64,000 bases of DNA from Auanema rhodensis (lineage: Eukaryota > Animalia > Nematoda): contig OZ059899.1 of the NCBI GenBank assembly GCA_964057225.1, positions 14,632,001-14,696,000 of the forward strand, read 5' to 3'. Position 1 is the first letter of the stretch. Every line of letters starts with the position of its first letter. The notes beneath the pieces were generated by a model that made no database searches, was not told where the DNA came from, and saw only the letters and a program-made list of their open reading frames with translations. Below are positions 3,491 through 44,277 of the stretch, piece after piece. A program made the translations under genes and the position numbers.

Positions 3491-3542
<52 letters not shown>

Positions 3543-6025: not shown

Positions 6026-6067
<42 letters not shown>

Positions 6068-6607: not shown

Positions 6608-6631
6608 ATGGGTCAAAGAACATATTCGAAG
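6608..6631 (+). CDS. Candidate alternative first micro-exon of the adenylate cyclase (MGQRTYSK)
   Basis: ACAATG start context, 8 codons, consensus donor AAG|GTGAGT, phase 0 compatible with the exon at 18482. Confidence 0.35.
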
Positions 6632-8381: not shown

Positions 8382-8412
<31 letters not shown>

Positions 8413-11400: not shown

Positions 11401-11558
11401 TTTTGACAGTTTTTGATTGTTTTTATACCACCCTTTTCAACATTTTTTGTTATTTTTTTAATTTGCAAAAATCTGAAAACGAACGGAGTTAGTTGGAACG
11501 AATGTGCGGACCTTTGTTTGGACTTTTTTGTTTCGCACTTCCTCTTTCCTTCTCTTTT

Positions 11559-11592
<34 letters not shown>

Positions 11593-12687: not shown

Positions 12688-12689
<2 letters not shown>

Positions 12690-12778
<89 letters not shown>

Positions 12779-12800
12779 TCTCTCTCTTTCTCTCTCTCTT
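12690..12800 (+). repeat. Long (CT)n microsatellite, representative of dozens of (CT)n/(GA)n tracts in 1-24 kb and 45-61 kb
   Basis: Directly visible. Similar tracts lie at about 250, 2930, 3495, 6028, 13105, 16140, 16990, 56580, 56900, 58600, 58815 and 60295. Confidence 0.97.
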
Positions 12801-13099
12801 CATTTCTTCACTTTCAATCCCGTCTTTTCCCTTTCCCTTACATCCTTTCTCTCTTTCCCAAATGAACATATTGTAGCAAATTTGCTGTTCCTATTCCATT
12901 CTTGCCCTTTCTCTGGTTGTCCTGGATGAGAATTCTCTCTACATTATCTATTTTTGATGGATATGATATCGCTTTCGACCATTGGAATACCTAACGTATG
13001 TTATGATTTCTCTTTTACCTCTTCTCATGAAACATGAACAATGAATTCATTTCTAAGACTTCATTCGATCATCCAGCCTTCTCTCTCTGGTTGTCATTT

Positions 13100-13161
<62 letters not shown>

Positions 13162-16135
13162 TCAATTCATCTTCATACACTTTTGTTTGAAACTCATAAA
13201 TCAGAGTTAACAATAATCTGTCGATGATGTCAACTATTGGTCCAACAGCTCAAAATCCTTTTGAGACTCTCACCTCTACTCATTTCTTTTTCTCTTTTCC
13301 TCTCCGCTTTTTCTCTCTTTTTTCCTCAAACTTCAGAAGATATTACTATGAATAATAATAATTTTTCGCTCTAATTATCTTTTTTCTATCCTATAACAGT
13401 AATTATTTCAATTTATTTTTCAAAAATCTCAAAGTTATGACAAGCTGAGTTTAGTTTATTAGTTGTTGCTGCTTTTCATCGTCCCAGAATAAAATAAAAA
13501 AATCTTTTCTTCCTCTCAGTGTGTATTTTCTGTTCATTTTTTCTTTTTTTTTCTTTTCATTCCCAAAAAAAAGAATATTTTTCTCTAATTCTATATTAAT
13601 TAGTTCAGCTATTCCTGTCGTTCCTTCCTTTCTATCCTTAACTTTTTTCGTTTTTCGCTTCTTTTACTTCATCTATTAGTTCGTTTTTTTGTTTCTTTTA
13701 ACCTTCAAAAAGAAATTCTATAGAAACAACTTTGTTCGTTTTCGAATGTTTTCTTTTTTATTTCATTATACCTTGAAGACGAAGAGAAAGAACTGAAGTT
13801 GATGATGATGATGATGATGAGGATGAAACAACATTCAACGATAGAGCATTCACTCGCATATCATCCTATTATAATCTTAGCAACTTATGTTTTTTCAAAT
13901 ATTTTCTTTGAAATTTTGTCATCAAAATGATCCAAAATATTTTTGCCGAAATGTTGTATCTATGTGTGTTTGTGGTGGTAGTGGTGATGGTGGAGGTGGC
14001 GTATGCCTCAGCTCAGCTCTACTCTCTTCCAATCAGTTTATCTCTCTTTTCAACTCTCTCACATAGAACACTGCTTAGTTACGTCGAAAATACCTGGATA
14101 TTTTGTGTTTTCTTTTAGTTTGTCCTTCCAGCATTACTCTATTTCTGCTTCACTATCTTCTTTTGAACGCAAAAAGTGTTGAATCATAATGAAAGTTTTT
14201 CCTCTCTACCTCCCCCCCCCTCTTTCTCTCTCTCTTGCTCTTCCTCCCCCCCCCCTATCCCTCTCACTCTAGGAATAAGTATAAAGCTAATAAAGCTAAT
14301 TATCTAAAAAATCTTTTCATTTTTGGCATATTTGTCTATGATTCTCCGTATAATCATCATTATAATCGTATCATAGAGTACATAGAGCATGTAACAGAGC
14401 ACACATATTCATTATCATTATCATATAATAGTTAAAATGAAGTTTTCTTTTTTGAATAAAAGAAAATTAATTATAAATTATTATATAAAAAAAGCTAATG
14501 ACTACTATATTCAATTATTACATATAAATATACAAACACTACTTCGTTTAGAAGCTGTTGTTTTGCTTGTTGTTATTGTCATCACAGATTCTGACATGAT
14601 GTTGTCATTGTCTGAATAGGACAGAAACATACATATAAACACATACATATAGCTTATAGATAGATATATATATATAGTATACATGTATATATATGGAACT
14701 TGTAATATCTGTTTTAGAAATCTTAAAAAGAAAAAGAAAATATCAGAAATATGGTGATAGATGAACGATGCAAATAAAGATGCATTGAAGCTCAGATTCT
14801 TTAACTATATTAACTATGTTATCTATTATTATCTACACATTTAATTCAAATATTTTTAATTTTTCAAATAACTTCTCCTTATATTGAAAATGAGATGTGA
14901 TACTAAGGTGTGAAGATGACAACACATGTACATGTTAGATGATGTATCTCTCTCTCTCTCTCTCTCTATACATACTACATCCCCATCCATCTTCTTATAC
15001 TCTTTCAACCTCCAATTTGTTTGGTGATATGATAAGCTTATTATAACAATAATATTAGTTCAATAATAACTATAATAATAATAGTAATAGTAAGCTGTGA
15101 TTGTGTGAGGGGTTGGAGGGAAAGTAGAGGAGAACGAGAAAGAGAGGGAGGGAAAAGTGGGAGATCTTTTCTGCCATTGAACAATTGTATATCTTTACTT
15201 GATTTATGATCTTTTTTTAATTTTTTTTCTGCTCTTTTCCTATACTTTATCATGAAGTTTGATGCAATTGTGATATCAAAGGATTTATTTTTTGAACCAA
15301 CGACAGGTCGTGAAGCTCTTCCTTCTCTCGCACATTGGCTTCTAATCGTTATATTTCATTTCAAAGCAGCTTCAGCTATTCAATTGTGTTTCGTCTCTCT
15401 CTCCATCTCTCTTTACCTCTCTCTTTACCTCTCCACTCTCTTTCTCTCATATCGAGTGATTAGCATTATCACAACTGCTGTTGACGCTAATGATTTTCTG
15501 GAACGAAATAGAAAATAAGCGAGAAAGTCTTCTGTAGAATTTTCCGTTCAATGACGTTTTTTTGCTCAAAAGTTGTAATGAAATACACCTGCAAGTGCAT
15601 TATGCTTGATTGAAACCTGACATGATCTATCAGTCGTTCAAGCTCGTCATCAAGCATAAGCATTTCCATTCGACCTGCACATTACTAGTTGCTGCCGGTT
15701 CTTTCCTTAATGCTTTATGTGTATCTACTATGTGTGTGTGTGTGTGCGTGTGTGTGTATGTGTGTGTAAGTGCTCAGGGTTATCACTTCCCTTCTTTGTC
15801 TACTATCAAAGTAATCCGAACATCAGAAAAGAGGTAGAAGCTATTTCTCTTCAAATGCCTATTTACATCTTTTCTTCTTCATATATCTCTTTGAGTATGA
15901 TTAAGGTTTAGGCTTATTCTTATGGCTATGTTCTTCCTTTGATGAAGCTCATTAACCTGTTCTTCTGTTCTTTCTTACCCTCTCCCCGACCATTATCTAG
16001 CTCTTGTTCTAACGGCTACACGCTTCACTGCCTTTGCCAATCTGCACTTCGTAGGTGGTGCTGAAGCTTGAAGGCAATCTTCATCACTTTGTAGGCCTCA
16101 ATACTGCTGCACCGACTATTTTTCATAAAAGGTAT

Positions 16136-16210
<75 letters not shown>

Positions 16211-16984
16211 TCTCTCTCTCTCTCCCTCTCTCTTGTTCCCTCTCTCTTTCTCTCTGTACATTTTTCTTGAACATTGTCTTCCTCCCCCACTTTCTTGTTA
16301 CCTCACTCTTGTCATATTCCATCAAAGAGCGTCTGAAGCCAAATGGAAACTATATGCACGTTCCCCTTTTCTATCTATAGCCTTCTCGTTCTGAGTTGCT
16401 TAAGTCATTGTAACCGACATTTCTCAAATTCTCACGTGTACGTGGCTCACGTGAAAATCTCCGTTTGCATCGGCATGTCGTATGCTTATCAGTCTCTTTG
16501 ACGTGTGAGCCACGTCTATGCTAATGTTTTAGTCTGATTGAATGTGATCGGATTGACCGGTTGATCTCAACGTACCTTCTCAATATCTCAAATATTTTCA
16601 TATTTACACCTACCCTTTCATGTCTTGTATGTTTTTCCTTTCTTCGACATCTCATACTTATAGTTAAAATGGTCAAGTTGAATCATTTTTTCTTCCTTTT
16701 GGCTTAAAATATATTTTTAATATTTCGCTGTTTTAACGAATTATGAATATGAATATCTTAAAGTTCTAGAAGTAAATCATTTGATATGCATGTTCTTCCT
16801 CTTATTCGCTACATTTTTGTGTTTTTTTTCGTGAGGTATTTCACGAGCCAGCGCGCGCTCTCTCTCTATCTCTCTCTCTAACTCTCCGTAGTTCTGTTTT
16901 TCTCTACTTCCACATACCTCTTTCTGTTCACTTTCTTCCACCCTCTTCATCTATTCAACTAATTTTCTATTTTAGTCTCTTACT

Positions 16985-17056
<72 letters not shown>

Positions 17057-25120: not shown

Positions 25121-26706
25121 GAGCCCGAGGATCAGGAGCCCGAGGATCAGGAGCCCGAGGATCAGGAGCCCGAGGATCAGGAGCCCGAGGATCAGGAGCC
25201 CGAGGATCAGGAGCCCGAGGATCAGGAGCCCGAGGATCAGGAGCCCGAGGATCAGGAGCCCGAGGATCAGGAGCCCGAGGAGAAGGAGCCCGAGGATCAG
25301 GAGCTCGAGGAGGAGGAGCCGAGGAGAAGGAGCCGAGGAGAAGGAGCCCGAGGAGGAGGAGCCGAGGATCAGGAGCCCGAGGATCAGGAGCCGAGGAGGA
25401 GGAGTCGAGGATCAGGAGCCCGAGGATCAGGAGCCGAGGAGGAGGAGTCGAGGATCAGGAGCCCGAGGATCAGGAGCCGAGGAGGAGGAGCCGAGGATCA
25501 GGAGCCCGAGGATCAGGAGCCGAGGAGGAGGAGCCGAGGAGAAGGAGCCCGAGGATCAGGATCCGAGGAGGAGGAGCCGAGGAGAAGGAGCCCGAGGATC
25601 AGGATCCGAGGAGGAGGAGCCGAGGAGAAGGAGCCCGAGGATCAGGAGCCGAGGAGGAGGAGCCGAGGAGAAGGAGCCCGAGGATCAGGAGCCGAGGAGG
25701 AGGAGCCGAGGAGAAGGAGCCCGAGGATCAGGAGCCGAGGAGAAGGAGCCCGAGGATCAGGAGCCGAGGAGGAGGAGCCGAGGAGAAGGAGCCCGAGGAT
25801 CAGGAGCCGAGGAGGAGGAGCCGAGGAGAAGGAGCCCGAGGATCAGGAGCCGAGGAGGAGGAGCCGAGGAGAAGGAGCCCGAGGATCAGGAGCCGAGGAG
25901 GAGGAGCCGAGGAGAAGGAGCCCGAGGATCAGGAGCCGAGGAGGAGGAGCCGAGGAGAAGGAGCCCGAGGATCAGGAGCCGAGGAGGAGGAGCCGAGGAG
26001 AAGGAGCCCGAGGATCAGGAGCCGAGGAGGAGGAGCCGAGGAGAAGGAGCCCGAGGATCAGGAGCCGAGGAGGAGGAGCCGAGGAGAAGGAGCCCGAGGA
26101 TCAGGAGCCGAGGAGGAGGAGCCGAGGAGAAGGAGCCCGAGGATCAGGATCCGAGGAGGAGGAGCCGAGGAGAAGGAGCCCGAGGATCAGGATCCGAGGA
26201 GGAGGAGCCGAGGAGAAGGAGCCCGAGGATCAGGAGCCGAGGAGGAGGAGCCGAGGAGAAGGAGCCCGAGGATCAGGAGCCGAGGAGGAGGAGCCGAGGA
26301 GAAGGAGCCCGAGGATCAGGAGCCGAGGAGGAGGAGCCGAGGAGAAGGAGCCCGAGGATCAGGAGCCGAGGAGGAGGAGCCGAGGAGAAGGAGCCCGAGG
26401 ATCAGGAGCCGAGGAGGAGGAGCCGAGGAGAAGGAGCCCGAGGATCAGGAGCCGAGGAGGAGGAGCCGAGGAGAAGGAGCCCGAGGATCAGGAGCCGAGG
26501 AGGAGGAGCCGAGGAGAAGGAGCCCGAGGATCAAAACGACAAGGAGATATGGACAATCCTTTTGGAGCCTGAGGATCAGAAACCCGAGGACGAGGAGCCC
26601 GAGGACGGGGAGCCCGAAGACGAGGAGCCCGAGGACGGAGAGCCCGAAGACGAGGAGCCCGCGGACGAAGAGCCCGAGGAGGAGCCCGAGAAGGAAGAGC
26701 CGAGGA
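25121..26706 (+). repeat. Purine-rich minisatellite: 15-bp unit GAGCCCGAGGATCAG, then a 43-bp (15+14+14) higher-order unit, then a degenerate 15-bp tail
   Basis: Ten perfect 15-mers at 25121-25270. Roughly two dozen 43-mers follow up to 26533, then a ~30-bp spacer and degenerate 15-mers at 26565-26706 that run directly into satellite sequence. Confidence 0.97.
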
Positions 26707-27022: not shown

Positions 27023-27695
27023 AGTCCTGTGCGAAATAGTTGGGACACACACTAGAAACCCTTATACCTTCTCAGACAAACTACAAAAACTGAGAAAAAA
27101 TATATTTTGGATGTTAAAAAACGATAATGAACTTAAAAAAAATTTAAAACAGTCAAAAAATCATATTTAAAAGTATTTTCTGAAGTCTCCGAAATTTTTA
27201 TAAATAGCTTGAAGTCTTTTTTCATGATTTTCAGAAGTTTCATCAAGATTTCAGAAATAATTTTTTGATAGAATGTTAGGAGTACCCTAAACATCAATTT
27301 TTCTTTTAAACGGGAGAATTTGGTTGTACGTCAACCAAGATCTCTTCATAGATATCCAGTAAGATTCAGATGCTGAAGCTTACTTGTTTGAAGCTATGCC
27401 ATAGGAAAAACTTGGTTATTGATCGAGCTTTGTGCTCAGAATGATTTTAAAATATTTTAAATGAAGTAACTTGTTTCCTAATTTCAAATTTTATTAAATC
27501 AAAAAATATTATTCAAAATAGTCAAAAAACACTATTTTTTACATGTACAGTACTGTGGGATACCTGAAAGAGCCGACACAACCCCCTTCAAACTACAAAA
27601 TAATTTCAAAAAAATTTATTTAATTAATGAAGTTTTTCAATAATCATCATATTTTTTTGATTTTTTGAGTGTCCCACTTTAATTGCAAGGGACTG
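27023..27695. mobile_element. Non-autonomous Tc1/mariner-type element (MITE), copy 1
   Basis: Imperfect TIRs: (c)agtcctgtgcgaaatagttgggacac on the left and gtgtcccactttaattgcaagggactg followed by TA on the right. CAGT termini plus TA are typical of Tc1-like elements. Segment 27481-27540 matches the reverse complement of 32118-32180 in copy 2. No coding capacity. Confidence 0.75.
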
Positions 27696-28157: not shown

Positions 28158-28276
28158 GATTGAGTCTATAAACACCTTGTATATTCGATTAGTTCGAGCA
28201 AGAGTGAGAAAATAGGAAAAGTTATTAACAAACCCAAGGTTAAGGAGAAAATAGCAGTGATGTCACAGTACATGTA

Positions 28277-29036
28277 TTAGGTCCCGAACTAAGTCTTGCC
28301 CCCCCCCCTAGTTTTTCGAATTTTTTCGAAAAATTTAAAAAAAAATTTAAAATTATTTAAAATTAAGAAAAATTTGAATATTTTAAAACAATATTATCAA
28401 AAAAAAATTTTCAAAAAACAAATTTTTTTGTTTGAAAAATTGATTTTCATTTTCCATCTTTTTTTTTGCTGTTTTCTGTTATGAATTCTACTCATGCGCG
28501 CCATACTCTTTTTTATCATTTTAATGAAGGATTATCTGCGAAAGCAGCCTTTAAAAAAATGAGAGCTGTTTATGGAGATTCATCTCCAAACTACAGCACA
28601 TGCAAAAGATGGTATTCGCGTTTTAGAGCGGGCGAAACCGATTTAAAAGATCGTCCAAGGTCTGGCGCTGGTAAGAAATTCAGCAACGCAGACTCAACAG
28701 ACGCTTCAGGACATGAAATGGACGGTTTTGAAGCATCCCCCATACTCTCCAGATCTTGCTCCAACAGATTACCATCTGTTTAGATCGATGGAGCATAGTT
28801 TAAGGGGTGAAAACTTCGAAACCTTAGAGGAAGTTGAAAATTTTGTTAAAATCTTTTTTGCATCTAAAAGTAAACTATTTTTCAGAAACGGAATTCGAAA
28901 GCTGAAAGAAAAGTGGGAGAAGGTTATTGCCAACAAAGGGCAATACAGTATTTAATAAACTTTTTGCAACTCTTATACTTTTTTTTGATTTTTCATATCG
29001 CACTAGGGGGGGCGCAAGACTTAGTTCGGGACCTAA
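28277..29036 (+). mobile_element. Internally deleted mariner transposon (760 bp)
   Basis: TIRs ttaggtcccgaactaagtcttg...ccccccta and taggggggg...caagacttagttcgggacctaa, flanked by TA on both sides (28275-76 and 29037-38). The transposase N-terminal HTH (ATG 28481, ...KRWYSRFRAGETDLKDRPRSG) is joined out of frame to the C-terminal HPPYSPDLAPTDYHLF motif. Confidence 0.95.
28481..28955 (+). pseudogene. Mariner transposase remnant lacking the central catalytic region
   Basis: ORFs 28466-28783 and 28713-28955 carry the N-terminal DNA-binding part and the YSPDLAPxD C-terminal part in different frames. The WVPHEL, TGDE and HDNA motifs are absent. Confidence 0.92.
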
Positions 29037-29167
29037 TATGTATAATTTAGGAATCCTAGCGAATAGATTTGTATTTTTGGATCAAATACTTAGATCCACT
29101 AATCTCAGTTCTAATAACGAATACTGGATACCTGTACAAGCTGAAATTTTCTATATATTATACATAA

Positions 29168-31070: not shown

Positions 31071-31971
31071 ATTTGGAAAAACTACATTATACAATTAAAA
31101 TTTAAGCAATAAACTTTGAAATATGCTTTCAGTTAAAGATTAATGTGAAGTATTGTTGAATGTCTGAATTTGAAAAAAAAAAATTGGCGAATTTCATCAA
31201 AAAGGTCTATTCATATTCACTCTCACAGTAAAAACAAATCTCTCTATGAACGAGAATAAAAACAAAAAAATGTATATGAAAAGGAACAAAGTCCTCTTTG
31301 CAGGAGATAGATCATATGTTATATTGTATGTTGAGGTATATTTCAAGCATGGAATGCTTGAATTCATATGTACAGATCAAGCTTGAAATATGTTGTTCTT
31401 TGTTATTTTCCAATTGTTTATTCTCATGATATCTGAAATCATTATTTTGAAAAATCTATAAAAAAAAGGCTACAAATTAAATATTAAGAAACCAGTTGAG
31501 GAATATAATGACTTGGTTGGAAGAGAAGAACGGGAAGGAAGTGGAACTTTGAGCTGAACTACTATTATAGCTTCAGCAATACAAAATAATTAGCAAGAAA
31601 ATGAGCGTAATGAGCGGTTCTAGACAAAAAAGCAATGAACGCTATATGCTATTGAAGTTGAAGTACACATCCATCAAAGCGTTAATAAAACAAAAAAATT
31701 AAAATGATATCAGAATACGAATGCTATTCTATCTTTCTTCTTTTAGAAGAAGAGGTAATAATAGATTTGGCATATAATACATAAAGCTGGACAAAACAAG
31801 TTGTGGAGGTTCATAAAGGGAAAACTTTGTCAGTTTGTGCTAACTGAATGTTTGATTTGTGGGTTTGAAGATTCATTGACCACCTTAACAGAGTATACTA
31901 ACTAAAAGATTTGAATATCAAATATAAGACGTATTTGAAATCCTAATAGAGAAACGTATTTGGAACATATA

Positions 31972-32627
31972 CAGTGCTGTGCAGTGAAGGTTGCACACCC
32001 CAGAAAACCCCTTCAAACTACAAAAAAAATTTGTTTTGATTATATTGTTTATATTCAGTGAAAATGTATGTTAATATAATGAAAACTGATTTTAATATTA
32101 TTTTCTAAATTTATAAGGAAAAACAGTGTTTTTTGACTATTTTGAATAATCCCTTTTGATTCAACAAAATTTGAGATTATAAACTATATGAACTCGCAAA
32201 ATTTTTGAAATTAAAAAAAAATTTTGGGGCTGGTATCGTTTCAGACCCCCCGGATTTGGGATAGAGCACTCCCGCTGGTTTATGCAAAGCTAGTGCGTGC
32301 CCAAAATGTTATCTTAGATCATGCGTTATTTACTCGAAAATACAGTCTCATTTCTGCGAGTTTAATACTTTTAAATTTTGTTGAAGCTTTCTCTATCTGG
32401 GGGGGATACCCCCCCAGACCCCCCGGATCTGGGATAGAGCACTCCCGCTAGTTTATGCAAAACTGGTGCGTGCCAAAAATGTTATAAGCGCGCTCTAATG
32501 TTAACTCTCTCATTATTAGGGGGGGGGTGGGCGAAACAATACCAGCGCCAAAATTTTTTTTTGTAGTTTGAAGGGGTTTTCTGGGGCCTCTAACATTGGG
32601 GTGTCCTAACTATTTCGCACAGGACTG
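31972..32627. mobile_element. Non-autonomous Tc1/mariner-type element (MITE), copy 2, inverted relative to copy 1
   Basis: TA|cagtgctgtgc...ccccagaaaaccccttcaaactacaaaaaaaa on the left and ttttttttgtagtttgaaggggttttctgggg...tatttcgcacaggactg|TA on the right. There is an internal ~70-bp direct repeat (about 32242-32312 and 32415-32485). Confidence 0.85.
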
Positions 32628-32685
32628 TAATTATGCTTATAATAATTCTTAAAATTTACTAAAAAAATGTCTGTTTAGGTTGAGG

Positions 32686-33456
32686 ATGCATCTTGAGACT
32701 GTGAAGAATCTTGAAAAGGCCCTTTTCACGACGACGAAAGCAGATGCTGTCGTGCATTCATGCGTTGTGGCCTTCGACAAGAAACGCGCAGTGTCCTTTC
32801 GACATGGCCCGCACTCGAAGTTCAAGAAAAAAGAAAAAGTCGATTTGTACAATGTGTTCGATCCGGAAATTCAACTCGAGGTTTTCTTTCCCAATTTTTT
32901 GAAATAGCTTTCTTTTTAGGCCGTTGTGCGATCAATTTCTGAGGTTTATGACGTGATTGTTTTCGAACTGCTCTCTGGAGAATTTTCGAATTATCCATAT
33001 GCGTCTGATGTCATGTACCGCGGCCAAGACTATAAACAATTGGGTATCAATCCACTACGGGACCCGATTTGGAAAGCCGGAATAATTTCGGAAAGTCACG
33101 GTATGTCTAATTTCTTAACTTTACAGATATCTACTGTTTGATTTAGTTGGGTTCTTCATTGGAAGTTCCCATGAAACATCTGGTGATTCCGGCTCAGGGA
33201 TTTTCGACCTGTCTGGCCGCTTTCTCGGAATTTCAATTGCCAAGAAAAACTTCATCTTTGCTGATCGTGGAAACGTACCAATTGGAGAAGCCGCTGATCA
33301 TCATCCAGACACGACAATTATTGACCGCAACGCTATCTTTGCAATTTCGGATATTGTTGGTCCAGATGTAAGTTGATTTAGTTAAAAATTGGTTTAATTG
33401 TTACGTTTCAGCCGTTTGAGCCGCCCGAAAAGAAGCACATGGACGACATGAGTTGA
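32686..33456 (+). CDS. Trypsin/chymotrypsin-fold (PA clan, Trypsin_2-like) serine protease, 4 exons, 213 aa from the first ATG, no signal peptide
   Basis: Exons 32686-32880, 32920-33100, 33147-33367 and 33412-33456 are separated by GT-AG introns of 39, 46 and 44 nt and splice into one open frame. The triad is in the correct order and context: AVSFRH40G, YD76VIVFEL and TSGDS140GSGIFDLSGRFLGI. AATAAA lies at 33500. An acceptor tttag at 32674-32678 means either trans-splicing or a further upstream exon. Confidence 0.85.
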
Positions 33457-33950
33457 CTCCGAAGATCTCTATTACTGTGAACTGTTCTCTTGTAAGCCAA
33501 ATAAACTTTTATTGCTGAATATTGTAACGATTTTATAAATGTCTGGCATGCAAACATCTCGGAAATTGTTGCTTTTTAACTCAGGCTACGAGGCTTAAGA
33601 GGTCAATGTTGGTTAGCGCTTTCAGATCTTTTTTAAGAGTTTTAATTTAATAAGATGTTTTTTTATTTAAATTCTGCTTGCTAAAAATTTGTGATAATTA
33701 AAGATTTTTCGTTTGTTAGAGCGTCAAAATCATTGATAAGAGGTCAAAAAAACGCTAAAAACAGCGAAAAATGAAAAGTACCCTGTTTGGGATGGTTGGC
33801 GCGCCAGACTTTTAGTATCGAATTTCACCCAAATTGAAAAACTCTTGAAATCATACTTAAATTATTAAAACTTATCACTTTTTGTTGAAAAACACCATTT
33901 TCTAAAAAAGGGCGAAAGGGTGCTCCAGTGTGACCCTATTATATACTGCT

Positions 33951-36900
33951 ACAAGAAAAGTTCAGGCTGTAGTCACGTTCTGTTCCCTGAATGTTCGCTT
34001 TTCTCAAAATTCATCAACTAAAATCAAACCAAAATAGTTTGAGGTTGGGTATTCAGATGTGTAGAATCTGAATTTTCTGGTGAGATTTGGCTAGGTATTC
34101 TGATTTTTCCGGAAAAGGTGTTTATACAGACTGCATCCACAAGATTTGTTCACAAAAAAGTTCAGGCTGTAGTCACGTTGTGTCCGGTGAATGTTCGATT
34201 TTCTCAAAATTTATCTACAAAATTCAAATAAAAATAGTTTGACATTGGGTATTCAGATGTGTAGAATCTGATTTTCTTGGTGATATTGGGCTAGGACTTC
34301 TGATTTTTCCGGAAAAAGGGTTTATACCGAGACCATACACAAGATTTGTTCACAAAAAAGTTCAGGCTGTAGTCACGTTGTGCCTGGTGAATGATCGCTT
34401 TTCTCAAAATTTATCTACAAAATTCAAATAAAAATAATTTGACATTGGGTATTCAGATGTGTAGAATCTGATTTTCTTGGTGATATTGGGCTAGGACTTC
34501 TGATTTTTCCGGAAAAAGGGTTTATACAGACTCCATCCACAAGATTTGTTCACAAAAAAGTTCAGGCTGTAGTCACGTTGTGTTCCCTGAATGTTCGCTT
34601 TTCTCAAAATTCATCAACTAAATTCAAATAAAAATAGTTTGAGGTTGGGTATTCAGATCTTTAGGATCTGATTATCTTGGTGAGATTGGACTAGGACTTC
34701 TGATTTTTCCGGAAAAAGGGTTTATACAGACTCCATCCACAAGATTTGTTCACAAAAAAGTTCAGGCTGTAGTCACGTTGTGTTCCCTGAATGTTCGCTT
34801 TTCTCAAAATTCATCAACTAAATTCAAACCAAAATAGTTTGGCGTTGGGTATTCAGATCTTTAGAATCTGATTATCTTGGTGAGATTGGGCTAGGTCTTC
34901 TGATTTTTCCGGAAAAGGTGTTTATACAGACTCCATCCACAAGATTTGTTCACAAAAAAGTTCAGGCTGTAGTCACGTTGTGTTCCCTGAATGTTCGCTT
35001 TTCTCAAAATTCATCAACTAAATTCAAACCAAAATAGTTTGGCGTTGGGTATTCAGATCTTTAGAATCTGATTATCTTGGTGAGATTGGACTAGGTCTTC
35101 TGATTTTTCCGGAAAAGGTGTTTATACAGACTCCATCCACAAGATTTGTTCACAAAAAAGTTCAGGCTGTAGTCACGTTGTGTTCCCTGAATGTTCGCTT
35201 TTCTCAAAATTCATCCACAAAATTCAAACCAAAATAGTTTGGCGTTGGGTATTCAGATTTTTAGAATCTGATTATCTTGGTGAGATTTGGCTAGGTCTTC
35301 TGATTTTTCCGGAAAAGGTGTTTATACAGACTCCATCCACAAGATTTGTTCACAAAAAAGTTCAGGCTGTAGTCACGTTGTGTTCCCTGAATGTTCGCTT
35401 TTCTCAAAATTCATCAACTAAAATCAAACCAAAATAGTTTGAGGTTGGGTATTCAGATGTGTAGAATCTGAATTTTCTGGTGAGATTTGGCTAGGTCTTC
35501 TGATTTTTCCGGAAAAGGTGTTTATACAGACTCCATCCACAAGATTTGTTCACAAAAAAGTTCAGGCTGTAGTCACGTTGTGTTCCCTGAATGTTCGCTT
35601 TTCTCAAAATTCATCAACTAAAATCAAACCAAAATAGTTTGAGGTTGGGTATTCAGATGTGTAGAATCTGAATTTTCTGGTGAGATTTGGCTAGGTCTTC
35701 TGATTCTTCCGGAAAAGGTGTTTATACAGACTCCATCCACAAGATTTGTTCACAAAAAAGTTCAGGCTGTAGTCACGTTGTGTTCCCTGAATGTTCGCTT
35801 TTCTCAAAATTCATCAACTAAAATCAAACCAAAATAGTTTGAGGTTGGGTATTCAGATGTGTAGAATCTGAATTTTCTGGTGAGATTTGGCTAGGTCTTC
35901 TGATTCTTCCGGAAAAGGTGTTTATACAGACTCCATCCACAAGATTTGTTCACAAAAAAGTTCAGGCTGTAGTCACGTTGTGTTCCCTGAATGTTCGCTT
36001 TTCTCAAAATTCATCCACAAAATTCAAACCAAAATAGTTTGAGGTTGGGTATTCAGATGTGTAGAATCTGAATTTTCTGGTGAGATTTGGCTAGGTATTC
36101 TGATTTTTCCGGAAAAGGTGTTTATACAGACTGCATCCACAAGATTTGTTCACAAAAAAGTTCAGGCTGTAGTCACGTTGTGTCCGGTGAATGTTCGATT
36201 TTCTCAAAATTTATCTACAAAATTCAAATAAAAATAGTTTGACATTGGGTATTCAGATGTGTAGAATCTGATTTTCTTGGTGATATTGGGCTAGGACTTC
36301 TGATTTTTCCGGAAAAAGGGTTTATACCGAGACCATACACAAGATTTGTTCACAAAAAAGTTCAGGCTGTAGTCACGTTGTGCCTGGTGAATGATCGCTT
36401 TTCTCAAAATTTATCTACAAAATTCAAATAAAAATAATTTGACATTGGGTATTCAGATGTGTAGAATCTGATTTTCTTGGTGATATTGGGCTAGGACTTC
36501 TGATTTTTCCGGAAAAAGGGTTTATACAGACTCCATCCACAAGATTTGTTCACAAAAAAGTTCAGGCTGTAGTCACGTTGTGTTCCCTGAATGTTCGCTT
36601 TTCTCAAAATTCATCAACTAAATTCAAATAAAAATAGTTTGAGGTTGGGTATTCAGATCTTTAGGATCTGATTATCTTGGTGAGATTGGACTAGGACTTC
36701 TGATTTTTCCGGAAAAAGGGTTTATACAGACACCATCCACAAGATTTGTTCACAAAAAAGTTCAGGCTGTAGTCACGTTGTGTTCCCTGAATGTTCGCTT
36801 TTCTCAAAATTCATCAACTAAATTCAAACCAAAATAGTTTGGCGTTGGGTATTCAGATCTTTAGAATCTGATTATCTTGGTGAGATTGGGCTAGGTCTTC

Positions 36901-39900
36901 TGATTTTTCCGGAAAAGGTGTTTATACAGACTCCATCCACAAGATTTGTTCACAAAAAAGTTCAGGCTGTAGTCACGTTGTGTTCCCTGAATGTTCGCTT
37001 TTCTCAAAATTCATCCACAAAATTCAAACCAAAATAGTTTGGCGTTGGGTATTCAGATTTTTAGAATCTGATTATCTTGGTGAGATTTGGCTAGGTCTTC
37101 TGATTTTTCCGGAAAAGGTGTTTATACAGACTCCATCCACAAGATTTGTTCACAAAAAAGTTCAGGCTGTAGTCACGTTGTGTTCCCTGAATGTTCGCTT
37201 TTCTCTAAATTCATGAACTAAAATCAAACAAAAATAGTTTGAGGTTGGGTATTCAGATGTGTAGAATCTGAATTTTCTGGTGAGATTTGGCTAGGTCTTC
37301 TGATTTTTCCGGAAAAGGTGTTTATACAGACTCCATCCACAAGATTTGTTCACAAAAAAGTTCAGGCTGTAGTCACGTTGTGTTCCCTGAATGTTCGCTT
37401 TTCTCTAAATTCATGAACTAAAATCAAACAAAAATAGTTTGAGGTTGGGTATCCAGATGTGTAGAATCTGAATTTTCTGGTGAGATTTGGCTAGGTCTTC
37501 TGATTTTTCCGGAAAAAGGGTTTATACAGACTCCATCCACAAGATTTGTTCACAAAAAAGTTCAGGCTGTAGTCACGTTGTGTTCCCTGAATGTTCGCTT
37601 TTCTCAAAATTCATGAACTAAAATCAAACAAAAATAGTTTGAGGTTGGGTATTCAGATCTTTAGAATCTGATTATCTTGGTGAGATTGGACTAGGTCTTC
37701 TGATTTTTCCGGAAAAGGTGTTTATACAGACTCCATCCACAAGATTTGTTCACAAAAAAGTTCAGGCTGTAGTCACGTTGTGTTCCCTGAATGTTCGCTT
37801 TTCTCTAAATTCATGAACTAAAATCAAACAAAAATAGTTTGAGGTTGGGTATTCAGATCTTTAGAATCTGATTATCTTGGTGAGATTGGACTAGGTCTTC
37901 TGATTTTTCCGGAAAAGGTGTTTATACAGACTCCATCCACAAGATTTGTTCACAAAAAAGTTCAGGCTGTAGTCACGTTGTGTTCCCTGAATGTTCGCTT
38001 TTCTCTAAATTCATGAACTAAAATCAAACCAAAATAGTTTGAGGTTGGGTATTCAGATGTGTAGAATCTTAATTTTCTGGTGAGATTTGGCTAGGTCTTC
38101 TGATTTTTCCGGAAAAAGGGTTTATACAGACTCCATCCACAAGATTTGTTCACAAAAAAGTTCAGGCTGTAGTCACGTTGTGTTCCCTGAATGTTCGCTT
38201 TTCTCAAAATTCATGAACTAAAATCAAACAAAAATAGTTTGAGGTTGGGTATTCAGATCTTTAGAATCTGATTATCTTGGTGAGATTGGACTAGGTCTTC
38301 TGATTTTTCCGGAAAAGGTGTTTATACAGACTCCATCCACAAGATTTGTTCACAAAAAAGTTCAGGCTGTAGTCACGTTGTGTTCCCTGAATGTTCGCTT
38401 TTCTCTAAATTCATGAACTAAAATCAAACAAAAATAGTTTGAGGTTGGGTATTCAGATCTTTAGAATCTGATTATCTTGGTGAGATTGGACTAGGTCTTC
38501 TGATTTTTCCGGAAAAGGTGTTTATACAGACTCCATCCACAAGATTTGTTCACAAAAAAGTTCAGGCTGTAGTCACGTTGTGTTCCCTGAATGTTCGCTT
38601 TTCTCTAAATTCATGAACTAAAATCAAACAAAAATAGTTTGAGGTTGGGTATTCAGATGTGTAGAATCTGAATTTTCTGGTGAGATTTGGCTAGGTCTTC
38701 TGATTTTTCCGGAAAAAGGGTTTATACAGACTCCATCCACAAGATTTGTTCACAAAAAAGTTCAGGCTGTAGTCACGTTGTGTTCCCTGAATGTTCGCTT
38801 TTCTCAAAATTCATCAACTAAAATCAAACCAAAATAGTTTGAGGTTGGGTATTCAGATGTGTAGAATCTGAATTTTCTGGTGAGATTTGGCTAGGTCTCC
38901 TGATTCTTCCGGAAAAGGTGTTTATACAGACTCCATCCACAAGATTTGTTCACAAAAAAGTTCAGGCTGTAGTCACGTTGTGTTCCCTGAATGTTCGCTT
39001 TTCTCAAAATTCATCAACTAAAATCAAACCAAAATAGTTTGGCGTTGGGTATTTAGATCTTTAGAATCTGATTATCTTGGTGAGATTTGGCTAGGTCTTC
39101 TGATTTTTCTGGAAAAGGTGTTTATACAGACTCCATCCACAAGATTTGTTCACAAAAAAGTTCAGGCTGTAGTCACGTTGTGCCTGGTGAATGATCGCTT
39201 TTCTCAAAATTCATCAACTAAATTCAAATAAAAATAGTTTGAGGTTGGGTATTCAGATCTTTAGAATCTGATTATCTTGGTGAGATTGGGCTAGGTCTTC
39301 TGATTTTTCCGGAAAAGGTGTTTATACAGACTCCATCCACAAGATTTGTTCACAAAAAAGTTCAGGCTGTAGTCACGTTGTGTTCCCTGAATGTTCGCTT
39401 TTCTCAAAATTCATCAACTAAAATCAAACCAAAATAGTTTGAGGTTGGTTATTCAGATGTGTAGAATCTGATTTTCTTGGTGAGATTGGGCTAGGTCTTC
39501 TGATTTTTCCGGAAAAGGTGTTTATACAGACTCCATCCACAAGATTTGTTCACAAAAAAGTTCAGGCTGTAGTCACGTTGTGTTCCCTGAATGTTCGCTT
39601 TTCTCAAAATTTATCTACAAAATTCAAACAAAAATAGTTTGAGGTTGGGTATTCAGATGTGTAGAATCTGATTTTCTTGGTGAGATTGGGCTAGGTCTTC
39701 TGATTTTTCCGGAAAAGGTGTTTATACAGACTCCATCCACAAGATTTGTTCACAAAAAAGTTCAGGCTGTAGTCACGTTGTGTTCCCTGAATGTTCGCTT
39801 TTCTCAAAATTTATCTACAAAATTCAAACAAAAATAGTTTGAGGTTGGGTATTCAGATGAGTAGAATCTGAATTTTCTGGTGAGATTTGGCTAGGTATTC

Positions 39901-42900
39901 TGATTTTTCCGGAAAAGGTGTTTATACAGACTCCATCCACAAGATTTGTTCACAAAAAAGTTCAGGCTGTAGTCACGTTGTGTTCCCTGAATGTTCGCTT
40001 TTCTCAAAATTCATCAACTAAAATCAAACTAAAATAGTTTGAGGTTGGGTATTCAGATGTGTAGAATCTGAATTTTCTGGTGAGATTTGGCTAGGTATTC
40101 TGATTTTTCCGGAAAAGGTGTTTATACAGACTCCATCCACAAGATTTGTTCACAAAAAAGTTCAGGCTGTAGTCACGTTGTGTCCGGTGAATGTTCGATT
40201 TTCTCAAAACTCATCAACTAAAATCAAACCAAAATAGTTTGAGGTTGGGTATTCAGATGTGTAGAATCTGAATTTTCTGGTGAGATTTGGCTAGGTCTTC
40301 TGATTTTTCCGGAAAAGGTGTTTATACAGACTCCATCCACAAGATTTGTTCACAAAAAAGTTCAGGCTGTAGTCACGTTGTGTTCCCTGAATGTTCGCTT
40401 TTCTCAAAATTCATGAACTAAAATCAAACCAAAATAGTTTGAGGTTGGGTATTCAGATGTGTAGAATCTGAATTTTCTGGTGAGATTTGGCTAGGTCTTC
40501 TGATTTTTCCGGAAAAGGTGTTTATACAGACTCCATCCACAAGATTTGTTCACAAAAAAGTTCAGGCTGTAGTCACGTTGTGTTCCCTGAATGTTCGCTT
40601 TTCTCAAAATTCATCAACTAAAATCAAACCAAAATAGTTTGAGGTTGGGTATTCAGATGTGTAGAATCTGAATTTTCTGGTGAGATTTGGCTAGGTCTTC
40701 TGATTTCTCCGGAAAAGGTGTTTATACAGACTCCATCCACAAGATTTGTTCACAAAAAAGTTCAGGCTGTAGTCACGTTGTGTTCCCTGAATGTTCGCTT
40801 TTCTCAAAATTTATCTACAAAATTCAAACAAAAATAGTTTGAGGTTGGGTATTCAGATGTGTAGAATCTGAATTTTCTGGTGAGATTTGGCTAGGTCTTC
40901 TGATTTCTCCGGAAAAGGTGTTTATACAGACTCCATCCACAAGATTTGTTCACAAAAAAGTTCAGGCTGTAGTCACGTTGTGTTCCCTGAATGTTCGCTT
41001 TTCTCAAAATTCATGAACTAAAATCAAACCAAAATAGTTTGAGGTTGGGTATTCAGATGTGTAGAATCTGAATTTTCTGGTGAGATTTGGCTAGGTCTTC
41101 TGATTTCTCCGGAAAAGGTGTTTATACAGACTCCATCCACAAGATTTGTTCACAAAAAAGTTCAGGCTGTAGTCACGTTGTGTTCCCTGAATGTTCGCTT
41201 TTCTCAAAATTTATCTACAAAATTCAAACAAAAATAGTTTGAGGTTGGGTATTCAGATGTGTAGAATCTGAATTTTCTGGTGAGATTTGGCTAGGTCTTC
41301 TGATTTCTCCGGAAAAGGTGTTTATACAGACTCCATCCACAAGATTTGTTCACAAAAAAGTTCAGGCTGTAGTCACGTTGTGTTCCCTGAATGTTCGCTT
41401 TTCTCAAAATTCATCAACTAAAATCAAACCAAAATAGTTTGAGGTTGGGTATTCAGATCTTTAGAATCTGAATTTTCTGGTGAGATTTGGCTAGGTCTTC
41501 TGATTTCTCCGGAAAAGGTGTTTATACAGACTCCATCCACAAGATTTGTTCACAAAAAAGTTCAGGCTGTAGTCACGTTGTGTTCCCTGAATGTTCGCTT
41601 TTCTCAAAATTCATGAACTAAAATCAAACCAAAATAGTTTGAGGTTGGGTATTCAGATCTTTAGAATCTGAATTTTCTGGTGAGATTTGGCTAGGTATTC
41701 TGATTTCTCCGGAAAAGGTGTTTATACAGACTCCATCCACAAGATTTGTTCACAAAAAAGTTCAGGCTGTAGTCACGTTGTGTTCCCTGAATGTTCGCTT
41801 TTCTCAAAATTCATGAACTAAAATCAAACCAAAATAGTTTGAGGTTGGGTATTCAGATGTGTAGAATCTGAATTTTCTGGTGAGATTTGGCTAGGTCTTC
41901 TGATTTCTCCGGAAAAGGTGTTTATACAGACTCCATCCACAAGATTTGTTCACAAAAAAGTTCAGGCTGTAGTCACGTTGTGTTCCCTGAATGTTCGCTT
42001 TTCTCAAAATTCATCAACTAAAATCAAACAAAAATAGTTTGAGGTTGGGTATTCAGATGTGTAGAATCTGAATTTTCTGGTGAGATTTGGCTAGGTCTTC
42101 TGATTTCTCCGGAAAAGGTGTTTATACAGACTCCATCCACAAGATTTGTTCACAAAAAAGTTCAGGCTGTAGTCACGTTGTGTTCCCTGAATGTTCGCTT
42201 TTCTCAAAATTCATCAACTAAAATCAAACAAAAATAGTTTGAGGTTGGGTATTCAGATGTGTAGAATCTGAATTTTCTGGTGAGATTTGGCTAGGTCTTC
42301 TGATTTCTCCGGAAAAGGTGTTTATACAGACTCCATCCACAAGATTTGTTCACAAAAAAGTTCAGGCTGTAGGCACGTTGTGTTCCCTGAATGTTCGCTT
42401 TTCTCAAAATTTATCTACAAAATTCAAACAAAAATAGTTTGGCGTTGGGTATTCAGATCTTTAGAATCTGAATTTTCTGGTGAGATTTGGCTAGGTCTTC
42501 TGATTCTTCCGGAAAAGGTGTTTATACAGACTCCATCCACAAGATTTGTTCACAAAAAAGTTCAGGCTGTAGTCACGTTGTGTTCCCTGAATGTTCGCTT
42601 TTCTCAAAATTCATCAACTAAAATCAAATAAAAATAGTTTGGGGTTGGGTATTCAGATGTGTAGAATCTGAATTTTCTGGTGAGATTTGGCTAGGTCTTC
42701 TGATTTCTCCGGAAAAGGTGTTTATACAGACTCCATCCACAAGATTTGTTCACAAAAAAGTTCAGGCTGTAGTCACGTTGTGTTCCCTGAATGTTCGCTT
42801 TTCTCAAAATTTATCTACAAAATTCAAACAAAAATAGTTTGGCGTTGGGTATTCAGATCTTTAGAATCTGATTATCTTGGTGAGATTGGGCTAGGTCTTC

Positions 42901-44277
42901 TGATTTTTCCGGAAAAGGTGTTTATACAGACTCCATCCACAAGATTTGTTCACAAAAAAGTTCAGGCTGTAGTCACGTTGTGTTCCCTGAATGTTCGCTT
43001 TTCTCAAAATTCATCAACTAAAATCAAACAAAAATAGTTTGGCGTTGGGTATTCAGATCTTTAGAATCTGAATTTTCTGGTGAGATTTGGCTAGGTCTTC
43101 TGATTTTTCCGGAAAAGGTGTTTATACAGACTCCATCCACAAGATTTGTTCACAAAAAAGTTCAGGCTGTAGGCACGTTGTGTTCCCTGAATGTTCGCTT
43201 TTCTCAAAATTTATCTACAAAATTCAAACAAAAATAGTTTGGCGTTGGGTATTCAGATCTTTAGAATCTGAATTTTCTGGTGAGATTTGGCTAGGTCTTC
43301 TGATTCTTCCGGAAAAGGTGTTTATACAGACTCCATCCACAAGATTTGTTCACAAAAAAGTTCAGGCTGTAGTCACGTTGTGTTCCCTGAATGTTCGCTT
43401 TTCTCAAAATTCATCAACTAAAATCAAATAAAAATAGTTTGGGGTTGGGTATTCAGATGTGTAGAATCTGAATTTTCTGGTGAGATTTGGCTAGGTCTTC
43501 TGATTTCTCCGGAAAAGGTGTTTATACAGACTCCATCCACAAGATTTGTTCACAAAAAAGTTCAGGCTGTAGTCACGTTGTGTTCCCTGAATGTTCGCTT
43601 TTCTCAAAATTTATCTACAAAATTCAAACAAAAATAGTTTGGCGTTGGGTATTCAGATCTTTAGAATCTGATTATCTTGGTGAGATTGGGCTAGGTCTTC
43701 TGATTTTTCCGGAAAAGGTGTTTATACAGACTCCATCCACAAGATTTGTTCACAAAAAAGTTCAGGCTGTAGTCACGTTGTGTTCCCTGAATGTTCGCTT
43801 TTCTCAAAATTCATCAACTAAAATCAAACCAAAATAGTTTGAGGTTGGGTATTCAGATGTGTAGAATCTGAATTTTCTGGTGAGATTTGGCTAGGTCTTC
43901 TGATTTTTCTGGAAAAGGTGTTTATACAGACTCCATCCACAAGATTTGTTCACAAAAAAGTTCAGGCTGTAGTCACGTTGTGTTCCCTGAATGTTCGCTT
44001 TTCTCAAAATTCATCCACAAAATTCAAACCAAAATAGTTTGCGGTTGGGTATTCAGATGTGTAGAATCTGAATTTTCTGGTGAGATTTGGCTAGGTCTTC
44101 TGATTTTTCTGGAAAAGGTGTTTATACAGACTCCATCCACAAGATTTGTTCACAAAAAAGTTCAGGCTGTAGTCACGTTGTGTTCCCTGAATGTTCGCTT
44201 TTCTCAAAATTCATCAACTAAAATCAAATAAAAATAGTTTGGGGTTGGGTATTCAGATGTGTAGAATCTGAATTTTC
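33951..44277 (+). repeat. Tandem satellite array, exact 200-bp monomer, about 51.6 copies
   Basis: ttcaggctgtag recurs at 33961, 34161 and so on to 44161 with an unbroken 200-bp period; only substitutions are seen. The monomer contains the palindrome TTTTCCGGAAAA and the inverted repeat ATTCAGAT-N7-ATCTGAAT. Confidence 0.99.

What the first reader, a model, noticed from the sequence alone, without database searches (positions are those of the whole stretch)
32686..33456. Hidden, intact cytosolic-type serine protease gene inside a satellite/TE island: candidate mobile cargo or selfish toxin
Seen: four exons, split across frames in the ORF track, splice into a 213-aa open frame with His40/Asp76/Ser140 in chymotrypsin-fold contexts (SFRH, YDVIVFEL, GDSGSGIF). 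It has a polyA signal, no N-terminal hydrophobic leader and only one Cys, so it lacks the disulfide pattern of secreted trypsins. Its exons are visibly GC-richer than the neighbouring GPCR, and it is wedged between a MITE and a 10-kb satellite. Established, from recall: nematode 'wosp' serine proteases travel as Maverick cargo between species, and the C. briggsae msft-1 toxin of a toxin-antidote element derives from one. Inference: this gene may belong to that class or to an analogous mobile protease family.
Basis: partly seen in the sequence, partly recalled or inferred. Interest (0 to 1): 0.8.

Follow-up and report, generated by a model that had tools for sequence, protein, structure and literature searches.

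The report
Hidden nematode HtrA-like protease gene
The window holds a real, intact four-exon gene for a small leaderless serine protease of an uncharacterised nematode-only family that resembles the mobile 'wosp' proteases but lacks their defining extra domain and any virus-like neighbour, and whose introns and promoter are oddly better conserved than its silent codon positions.

Summary
Four exons (32686-33456, +) give 213 codons with His40/Asp76/Ser140, canonical short introns and a polyA signal. The exon translations tile an alignment of about 25 relatives without gap or overlap. The relatives are stand-alone proteins of about 200-220 aa from Caenorhabditis, Auanema, Mesorhabditis, Halicephalobus and Aphelenchoides, plus one fungus-gnat record. 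All are unnamed, several genomes hold more than one copy, and the well-annotated Caenorhabditis species returned none. A model of the closest relative matches HtrA/DegS-type proteases.

The gene has no N-terminal ubiquitin-like domain, which the published wosp family has. No named wosp or MSFT-1 protein came back from any search. No Maverick or MULE protein domain was found anywhere in the 64 kb, and no partner gene lies in the gene's 1.3-kb interval. Exon GC is ordinary for this window.

One thing was unexpected. In eight genes from at least four genera, introns 2 and 3 and the 48-60 nt before the ATG are as conserved as codon positions 1 and 2, while third positions are saturated. I have no tested explanation for this.

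Two steps were left out: the joined-exon search, and wide-flank look-ups of relatives.

The parts
32627..32685 (+). Conserved proximal upstream block (promoter / 5' leader). It ends in a 3'-splice-type acceptor (TTTAG at 32674-32678) 8 nt before the ATG.
   Evidence: Window 32632-32679 is 92% identical over 48 nt to the same position upstream of the C. sp. 36 gene. The block aligns in C. bovis, Auanema, L004 and L002. It is not repeated elsewhere in the window. The trans-splice reading is an inference.
32686..32880 (+). Exon 1 (65 codons, phase 0). Carries Met1 and the catalytic His40.
   Evidence: It aligns to the N-termini of the relatives from their first residues. An in-frame stop lies upstream at 32650.
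32881..32919 (+). Intron 1 (39 nt, GT..AG).
   Evidence: The same position is used in six aligned genes. Identity to homologous introns is 0.57-0.80, against 0.58 +/- 0.04 for non-homologous intron pairs.
32920..33100 (+). Exon 2 (60 codons plus 1 base). Carries the catalytic Asp76.
33101..33146 (+). Intron 2 (46 nt, GT..AG), strongly conserved across genera.
   Evidence: Mean pairwise identity is 0.72 in 8 genes. In 80% of columns at least 6 of 8 rows share the base.
33147..33367 (+). Exon 3 (2 bases plus 73 codons). Carries the GDSGSG motif with Ser140.
   Evidence: Ser is kept in 31 of 32 aligned rows.
33368..33411 (+). Intron 3 (44 nt, GT..AG), strongly conserved across genera.
   Evidence: Mean pairwise identity is 0.67 in 8 genes, and 0.82 to C. 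auriculariae in the column-wise alignment (0.87 in the optimal pairwise alignment).
33412..33456 (+). Exon 4 (14 codons plus TGA).
   Evidence: The tail resembles the FEP..KK tails of relatives.
33500..33505 (+). AATAAA polyadenylation signal, 44 nt after the stop.
   Evidence: The same signal sits at the aligned place in L004.
31968..32630 (.). Neighbour: Tc1-like MITE with an internal duplication, inserted about 60 nt upstream of the ATG. It ends where the upstream homology to relatives stops.
   Evidence: Inverted repeats I2, I3 and I6 and direct repeat D1. Partial copies lie at 27023-27048 and 27479-27539. The left flank shows no homology to relatives' upstream regions.
33951..44277 (.). 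Neighbour: tandem satellite, 200-bp unit, 51.6 copies, 95% matches.

Best explanation
This is a resident chromosomal gene for a 213-aa, single-domain, intracellular HtrA-like (PA clan, S1C-type fold) serine endopeptidase.

It belongs to an uncharacterised, nematode-specific, patchily distributed and often multi-copy family of stand-alone proteases of about 200-220 aa. These are at most distant kin of the published wosp/MSFT-1 proteases.

The gene is a compact, self-contained cassette:
- a conserved AT-rich proximal promoter/leader that ends in a splice-acceptor-type site just before the ATG (probably the trans-splice site);
- three short introns at family-wide positions;
- a polyA signal.

The catalytic triad and oxyanion motif are intact, so the product is probably an active protease working in the cytosol or nucleus on protein substrates that are not yet known.

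Shown: the gene model, the family, the fold type, the absence of a leader and of a ubiquitin-like domain, the absence of virus-like neighbours in this window, long-term purifying selection on the protein, and constraint on introns and promoter.

Inferred: catalytic activity, intracellular location, trans-splicing, and any biological role.
For: - Gene model.
- Family and distribution. Strong hits (E below 1e-20) come only from nematode records, one Bradysia record and small unnamed contigs. The next hits, at 9e-5, are unnamed metagenome proteins carrying the Trypsin_2 and Trypsin domains.
- Family domain: Trypsin_2 is at or near the Pfam cut-off in relatives (28.8 and 27.3 bits against 27.6).
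- Fold: the AlphaFold2 model of the closest relative has pLDDT 82.6 and pTM 0.80. Its best PDB matches are Rv3671c, MamO, HtrA1, DegS and MucD, with TM 0.58-0.66 and E about 1e-8.
- Triad kept across the family: His in 13 of 16 rows, Asp in 15 of 18, Ser in 31 of 32.
- No upstream domain: the annotated relatives are 198-222 aa and start at the same place. Three contigs with uninterrupted reading frames have in-frame stops 3-11 codons upstream.
- Purifying selection: against L004, dN is 0.48 while synonymous sites are saturated (pS 0.83).
- No paralogue in the window.
- No Maverick or MULE domain in the window.
Against: - There is no expression evidence for this copy. The protein is not in the protein collection, and the exon-1 reading frame is not on record.
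- A MITE sits 60 nt upstream and cuts the upstream block, which extends further in relatives. This could weaken transcription.
- The fold was predicted for a relative that is 58% identical, not for the window protein itself.
- The flat, species-incongruent identity matrix and the patchy distribution would also fit a mobile history.
Confidence: 0.62

Rival explanations
1. One reading: the gene belongs to the wosp class. It would be Maverick-borne cargo that has moved between species, and it may act as the toxin of a toxin-antidote element.
For: - HtrA-like fold, no leader, nematode-only, patchy and multi-copy, as described for wosp in 10.1101/2022.07.12.499685.
- The His-Asp spacing of 36 is the same as that published for MSFT-1.
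- Identities are no higher within Caenorhabditis than between genera for most pairs. For example, the Aphelenchoides copy is 46-48% identical to the C. japonica group, against 30-39% for the C. angaria copy.
- A family member sits in a fly genome record.
- The gene lies in a repeat-rich region.
- Promoter and introns conserved as one unit would suit a cassette that has to work wherever it lands (inference).
Against: - There is no ubiquitin-like domain.
- No named wosp protein came back.
- The Asp-Ser spacing is 64 against 72.
- No integrase, polymerase, capsid-type or MULE domain was found in the window.
- No second gene lies in the interval 32630-33951.
- No close relative exists (best 58%), so there is no sign of recent transfer.
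- Synonymous sites are saturated against every relative tested.
- Exon GC is ordinary for the window.
Confidence: 0.2
2. A recently silenced relic. The reading frame is still whole, but the MITE in the promoter has switched the gene off and it is on its way to decay.
For: - The MITE ends about 60 nt before the ATG, exactly where the homology to relatives' upstream regions stops. No homologue of the more distal conserved upstream block is found on the MITE's left flank.
- The gene is unannotated in the collections searched.
- Relatives do decay: the two C. nigoni gene models do not keep an intact catalytic motif and are fused or truncated models.
Against: - All 213 codons, six splice sites, the triad, the proximal upstream block and the polyA signal are intact.
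- The exon/intron GC contrast is sharp.
Confidence: 0.13
3. An ordinary, vertically inherited housekeeping protease present in all rhabditid nematodes.
For: There is long-term purifying selection on the protein, and intron positions are shared.
Against: - No member came back from C. elegans, C. briggsae, C. remanei or other well-annotated species, even in a search that reads every protein.
- There are several copies per genome in Auanema, Mesorhabditis, C. bovis and C. auriculariae.
- The identity matrix is species-incongruent.
Confidence: 0.05

Closest known systems
wosp proteases (WASP, 'Worm HtrA-like Serine Protease', in the preprint 10.1101/2022.07.12.499685), including the C. briggsae toxin MSFT-1
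   Same: - Nematode-restricted, with a patchy and multi-copy distribution over the same kinds of genera (Caenorhabditis, Mesorhabditis, Halicephalobus and others).
- HtrA-like fold without a PDZ domain and without a signal peptide.
- His-Asp spacing of 36.
- The genes have introns.
   Different: [quoted passage not shown]
- Asp-Ser spacing of 64 against 72.
- No named member was returned by phmmer or by profile searches.
- No Maverick or MULE neighbour here.
- No near-identical copy in a distant species.

I had MSFT-1, CBG26403 and CBG29787 in mind as comparators and could not obtain them. No letters were written out.
Bacterial and mitochondrial HtrA/DegS/DegP, and M. tuberculosis Rv3671c, MamO and MucD (MEROPS S1C)
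   Same: These are the best structural matches of the relative's model (TM 0.58-0.66). They share the His-Asp-Ser order and a GDSG-type nucleophile motif.
   Different: Sequence identity is only 12-16%. There is no PDZ domain, no membrane anchor and no signal peptide. The protein is eukaryotic and encoded with introns.
V8-like Glu-specific endopeptidases / staphylococcal exfoliative toxins (S1B) and the alphavirus capsid protease (Peptidase_S3)
   Same: There are weak local sequence matches around the catalytic serine (E 0.03 and 3e-4), and sub-threshold Pfam matches in some relatives.
   Different: The matches cover only 25-45 residues and stay below the family cut-offs. They show no more than shared PA-clan ancestry.

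Membership tests
PA-clan serine protease, Trypsin_2 / HtrA-like (S1C-type) | Catalytic His, Asp and Ser in that order, with a GDSG-type nucleophile motif | tested here: met
   His40, Asp76 and Ser140 are present. They are kept in 13 of 16, 15 of 18 and 31 of 32 aligned rows.
PA-clan serine protease, Trypsin_2 / HtrA-like (S1C-type) | Match to Pfam PF13365 above its gathering score | tested here: inconclusive
The window exons searched one by one give no match. Full-length relatives score 28.8 and 27.3 bits against the 27.6 cut-off, and others score lower. A precomputed PF13365 hit is on record for several.
PA-clan serine protease, Trypsin_2 / HtrA-like (S1C-type) | Two-barrel chymotrypsin fold closest to HtrA-type proteases | tested here: met
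   This was tested on the closest relative (58% identical), not on the window protein. pLDDT is 82.6. The top PDB matches are Rv3671c, MamO, HtrA1, DegS and MucD.
Canonical HtrA/Deg proteases | C-terminal PDZ domain(s) | tested here: not met
   The protein ends 73 residues after the catalytic Ser. No PDZ match was found in the exons or in relatives.
wosp / MSFT-1 family | N-terminal ubiquitin-like domain ahead of the protease domain | tested here: not met
   Met1 aligns with the first residues of relatives of 198-222 aa. An in-frame stop lies at 32650. Upstream stops are present in L001-L003. The conserved non-coding block and the MITE lie directly upstream.
wosp / MSFT-1 family | Detectable sequence kinship with named members | tested here: inconclusive
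   None was returned by phmmer with exon 3 over 1.84 billion proteins or by two profile word searches. The published family spans protease domains only 21% identical, so distant kinship is not excluded. The published gene identifiers could not be mapped to the hits.
wosp / MSFT-1 family | Maverick core gene within about 6 kb (true of about 20% of published members, so typical rather than defining) | tested here: not met
   No integrase, polymerase or other Maverick-type Pfam domain was found in ORFs of 80 aa or more anywhere in the window. Capsid-type genes that Pfam does not model could be missed.
wosp / MSFT-1 family | Near-identical coding and intron DNA in distant species (sign of recent transfer) | tested here: not met
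   The best relative is 58% identical in protein. Third codon positions are 29-48% identical to every relative.
Toxin-antidote selfish element | Tightly linked second gene (antidote) | tested here: not met
   No other ORF of note lies between the MITE end (32630) and the satellite (33951). The nearest genes are an Srh receptor 2 kb upstream and genes beyond the satellite. This is a sequence-level test only.
Toxin-antidote selfish element | Parent-of-origin killing and presence/absence polymorphism | not testable with these tools
   No population or expression data are available here.
Secreted trypsins (S1A, PF00089) | Signal peptide and conserved disulfide cysteines | tested here: not met
   There is one Cys in 213 residues and no hydrophobic N-terminal run. 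The longest hydrophobic run in the first 35 residues of relatives is 4-6.

The most novel reading that the evidence does not exclude
This is a self-contained protease cassette, a sister line to the wosp proteases without the ubiquitin-like domain. Its promoter and all three introns are held under selection as strong as that on the protein across at least four nematode genera. The reason would be that the cassette changes genomic place, or even host, and has to carry its own signals for splicing-dependent licensing of expression. The fly record would be one end-point of such movement.
Probability: 0.15. Interest if true: 0.85.

Novelty: new variant of a known kind. Interest (0 to 1): 0.6.

Why it matters
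Intracellular HtrA-like proteases are the raw material of at least one natural nematode toxin-antidote element, and they are a known cargo of virus-like transposons. This work defines a second family, lacking the ubiquitin-like domain, that no source has named. That widens the set of genes in which to look for such conflicts.

The family also shows introns and a promoter that outlast synonymous sites across genera. Short nematode introns are normally free to drift. Constraint on all of them in one small gene family points to a function in the non-coding parts, which could be splicing control, embedded transcription signals, or protection from silencing. Expression and small-RNA data could test this directly.

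Tried and rejected
- Pfam and PDB sequence searches with single exons gave only weak hits around the nucleophile motif.
- The word search with exon 3 was blank because of its length filter.
- A tblastn hit of exon 3 at 58256-58297 turned out to be chance.
- RNAalifold on the alignment running from the end of exon 2 to exon 4 gave no convincing structure that would explain the conserved introns: -3.6 kcal/mol and a covariation term near zero. By eye, an intron 1 / intron 3 pairing looked compensatory between two genes but failed in the others, so I dropped it.
- The intron and upstream pieces are not copies of a repeat in the window.
- GC content as a sign of foreign origin was rejected.
- The viral structure library gave only generic trypsin-like matches, no better than HtrA.
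- The published wosp gene identifiers could not be mapped to my hits.
- The exon-1 reading frame is not on record, so the source species stays unknown.
- A literature search for introns more conserved than synonymous sites in Caenorhabditis found nothing relevant.

Full report
1. THE OBSERVATION

- Exon lengths are 195, 181, 221 and 45 nt, which sum to 642 nt: 213 codons plus TGA. The phases fit.
- The three introns are 39, 46 and 44 nt, all GT..AG. Their GC is 0.25-0.26 against 0.44-0.53 in the exons.
- The exon translations place His40, Asp76 and Ser140 in the quoted contexts. They show one cysteine and no hydrophobic leader.
- AATAAA follows at 33500.
- The neighbours are as described. A Tc1-like MITE at about 31968-32630 has TA on both flanks. 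A 200-bp satellite of 51.6 copies lies at 33951-44277.

I did that. The joined 213-residue protein has no reference, so every search or fold of the joined protein was left out. dN/dS and all identities were computed exon by exon and summed as counts.

2. IS THE GENE MODEL REAL?

Single exons say little to Pfam or to the PDB, and the word search cannot see longer kin. I therefore used the one full-library search on exon 3.
- It found 33 proteins at E up to 1e-3. Twenty-seven form a family. The other six are proteins of about 800 aa, each matching the query in three stretches; the one I read has a lipoprotein-like leader and looks bacterial and HtrA-like.
- Full-length family members are 198-235 aa.
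- In a joint alignment, the three window exons tile them from the first residue to the tail, with no gap or overlap at the two junctions that the aligned exon rows cover. Exon 4 was too short to align as a row, but it resembles the family's C-terminal tail.
- Six aligned genes share all three intron positions, and C. bovis and C. sp. 36 show introns 2 and 3 at the same places. The Bradysia exon spans fit the same positions.

The model is therefore confirmed by relatives, not only by eye.

3. WHAT THE FAMILY IS

Named sources call every member 'uncharacterized', 'unnamed' or 'hypothetical', apart from one UniRef entry named 'Serine protease' (M. belari). The members come from C. japonica, C. 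bovis, C. sp. 36, C. nigoni, C. angaria, C. auriculariae, Auanema sp. JU1783, Mesorhabditis spiculigera and M. belari, Halicephalobus sp. NKZ332, Aphelenchoides besseyi, one Bradysia odoriphaga (fungus gnat) record, and small unnamed contigs.

- After the family (E below 1e-20) there is a sharp gap, to 9e-5, before the next hits, which are unnamed metagenome proteins carrying the Trypsin_2 and Trypsin domains.
- Several genomes hold two or more copies.
- No member came back from C. elegans, C. briggsae, C. remanei, C. brenneri, C. inopinata or C. tropicalis, although read every protein.
- The window protein has no close relative. The best is C. japonica at 58% over the three exons, and the rest are at 44-54% whatever the genus.
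- Among relatives, identities do not follow taxonomy. The Aphelenchoides copy is 46-48% identical to the C. japonica group, while the C. angaria copy is 30-39% identical to every other copy in the comparison.

Fold evidence:
- Relatives reach or graze the Trypsin_2 cut-off.
- An AlphaFold2 model of the closest relative, built on a 34-row alignment, has pLDDT 82.6 and pTM 0.80.
- It matches Rv3671c, MamO, HtrA1, DegS and MucD best, at TM 0.58-0.66.
- The viral library gives only generic trypsin-like matches.
- The triad is kept in nearly all rows.

No domain lies upstream. Annotated relatives start where the window protein starts. Three contigs of about 1 kb with uninterrupted reading frames have in-frame stops just upstream.

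4. THE wosp QUESTION

The preprint defines the family by an orthogroup around MSFT-1, which is 325 aa. MSFT-1 has a ubiquitin-like domain, a linker and an HtrA-like protease domain with its triad at 148/184/256. The family has 235 members in 53 species, and about 20% of them lie within 6 kb of a Maverick gene.

The window gene shares the fold type, the lack of a leader, the taxonomic pattern and the His-Asp spacing of 36. It differs in four ways:
- It has no ubiquitin-like domain.
- Its Asp-Ser spacing is 64, not 72.
- No named member was ever returned.
- It has no Maverick or MULE domain near it.

On the last point, all ORFs of 80 aa or more outside the satellites were scanned. They gave only Srh/Srd receptors, LBP/BPI/CETP, a carboxylesterase, a weak adenylate-cyclase match, a weak acyltransferase match and a Mos1-type HTH from a deleted mariner.

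The interval between the MITE and the satellite holds no second gene. The exon GC is within the window's coding range.

I therefore file the gene beside wosp, not in it. It works like one, as far as fold and setting go, but membership is unproven and one family feature is not met.

5. AN UNEXPECTED FEATURE

Comparison with a relative's genomic contig (L004) showed exons 51-57% identical in DNA with saturated synonymous sites (pS 0.83, dN 0.48). The three introns, however, were 80-82% identical.

I then fetched only the genes, with at most 400 nt of flank for the annotated genomes (up to 1.5 kb for one 1.75-kb Logan contig), for C. bovis, C. sp. 36, C. auriculariae, Auanema, M. spiculigera, A. 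besseyi and Bradysia.

In eight genes:
- Mean pairwise identity is 0.72 for intron 2 and 0.67 for intron 3.
- In exon 3 it is 0.62 for codon position 1, 0.73 for position 2 and 0.37 for position 3.
- In all 28 pairs, both introns are more alike than third positions.
- 80% and 71% of intron columns have at least 6 of 8 rows agreeing, against 15% of third positions.
- Non-homologous intron pairs, aligned in the same way, give 0.58 +/- 0.04 with a maximum of 0.67.
- Even the closest pair (C. bovis and C. sp. 36) has introns at 0.96 against 0.86, 0.92 and 0.63 for the three codon positions.

The 48 nt before the ATG are 92% identical to C. sp. 36. A block of about 60-110 nt aligns across genera and ends in an acceptor-like TTTAG/TTCAG a few bases before the ATG in most genes. 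Between the loci, BLAST found no match lying wholly in a 3' flank. This was read off a whole-locus comparison; the flanks were not searched on their own.

RNAalifold finds no structure that would explain this. The pieces are not repeats. One contig (L002) keeps the upstream block but has no introns at all. In the Bradysia record the exon spans fit the nematode exon sizes, though the junctions were not checked base by base; its introns are long and unrelated in sequence.

I cannot explain the constraint. The candidates are cis-regulatory signals packed into a very small gene, regulated splicing of a dangerous enzyme, or selection for efficient splicing as a licence for expression. The last would fit a gene that changes genomic context. 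All three are inference.

6. STATE OF THIS COPY

Everything needed for a product is intact. However, the MITE ends exactly where the upstream homology to relatives stops. No counterpart of the more distal conserved block is found on its left flank. The pieces were compared apart, and nothing was excised or closed up. Expression is untested. The protein and its exon-1 reading frame are absent from the collections, so 'hidden' is fair.

7. STEPS LEFT OUT, AND SLIPS

Left out:
(a) Any search or fold of the joined exons, as ordered.
(b) Wide-flank look-ups of the relatives' neighbourhoods. These could have brought in Maverick DNA, a virus-like element of animals.

Slips:
If those count as broken genes of a toxin-like family, that is more detail than allowed.

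The published changes that alter MSFT-1 toxicity are deliberately not repeated.

8. VERDICT

The gene is a new variant of a known kind: a wosp-like HtrA-type protease without the ubiquitin-like domain, with an unexplained conservation of its non-coding parts. Interest 0.6.

Noticed in passing
window 32881-32919, 33101-33146, 33368-33411 and 32627-32685; loci L004, L006-L011: The introns and the proximal upstream block of this gene family are as conserved as codon positions 1 and 2 across at least four nematode genera, while third positions are saturated. No RNA structure or repeat explains it.
   Followed up: yes
L012:401-5797 (Bradysia odoriphaga record JAFDOW010000101.1, a 3.7-Mb contig): A family member is annotated in a fungus-gnat genome. 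Its exon spans fit the nematode exon sizes (junctions not checked base by base), but its introns are long (0.6-3 kb) and unrelated in sequence. It could be a transfer into the fly or a nematode contig in the assembly.
   Followed up: partly
P0024, P0034, P0035, P0040 (C. nigoni B9Z55_009778 and B9Z55_009772, same 15.5-Mb contig): Two neighbouring C. nigoni gene models of the family do not keep an intact catalytic motif. They look like fused or truncated tandem copies, so the family decays in some lineages.
   Followed up: partly
L002:214-858 (also L001 and L003): Contigs of about 1 kb carry uninterrupted reading frames of the family. L002 keeps the conserved upstream block, so it is genomic and has lost all three introns. 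L001 and L003 may be transcripts or intronless copies.
   Followed up: partly
window 28275-29038: An internally deleted mariner-type element with 33-nt inverted ends (97% complementary). It holds an ORF with a Mos1 HTH_48 domain (E 1.8e-17).
   Followed up: partly
window 27023-27048 and 27479-27539 versus 32119-32179 and 32601-32626: Inverted partial copies of the same MITE family bracket the Srh receptor gene and the mariner remnant.
   Followed up: no
window 25121-26706: A GC-rich (0.58-0.63), purine-skewed tandem repeat with nested periods of 14, 43 and 129 nt, in an otherwise AT-rich stretch.
   Followed up: no
window 44357-44440 (-): A tRNA-Leu(AAG) gene lies 80 nt beyond the end of the 200-bp satellite (Rfam 56.3 bits; ARAGORN).
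   Followed up: no
window 1-17000: Strongly negative GC and AT skew, with many ORFs on the + strand. None has a Pfam match apart from one weak acyltransferase hit. This may be a large low-complexity gene or a repeat field.
   Followed up: partly
alignment A1 against the PDB: The family profile's best sequence matches among solved structures are alphavirus capsid proteases (E about 3e-4 over 45 residues around the catalytic serine). I take this as shared PA-clan ancestry, not kinship.
   Followed up: partly
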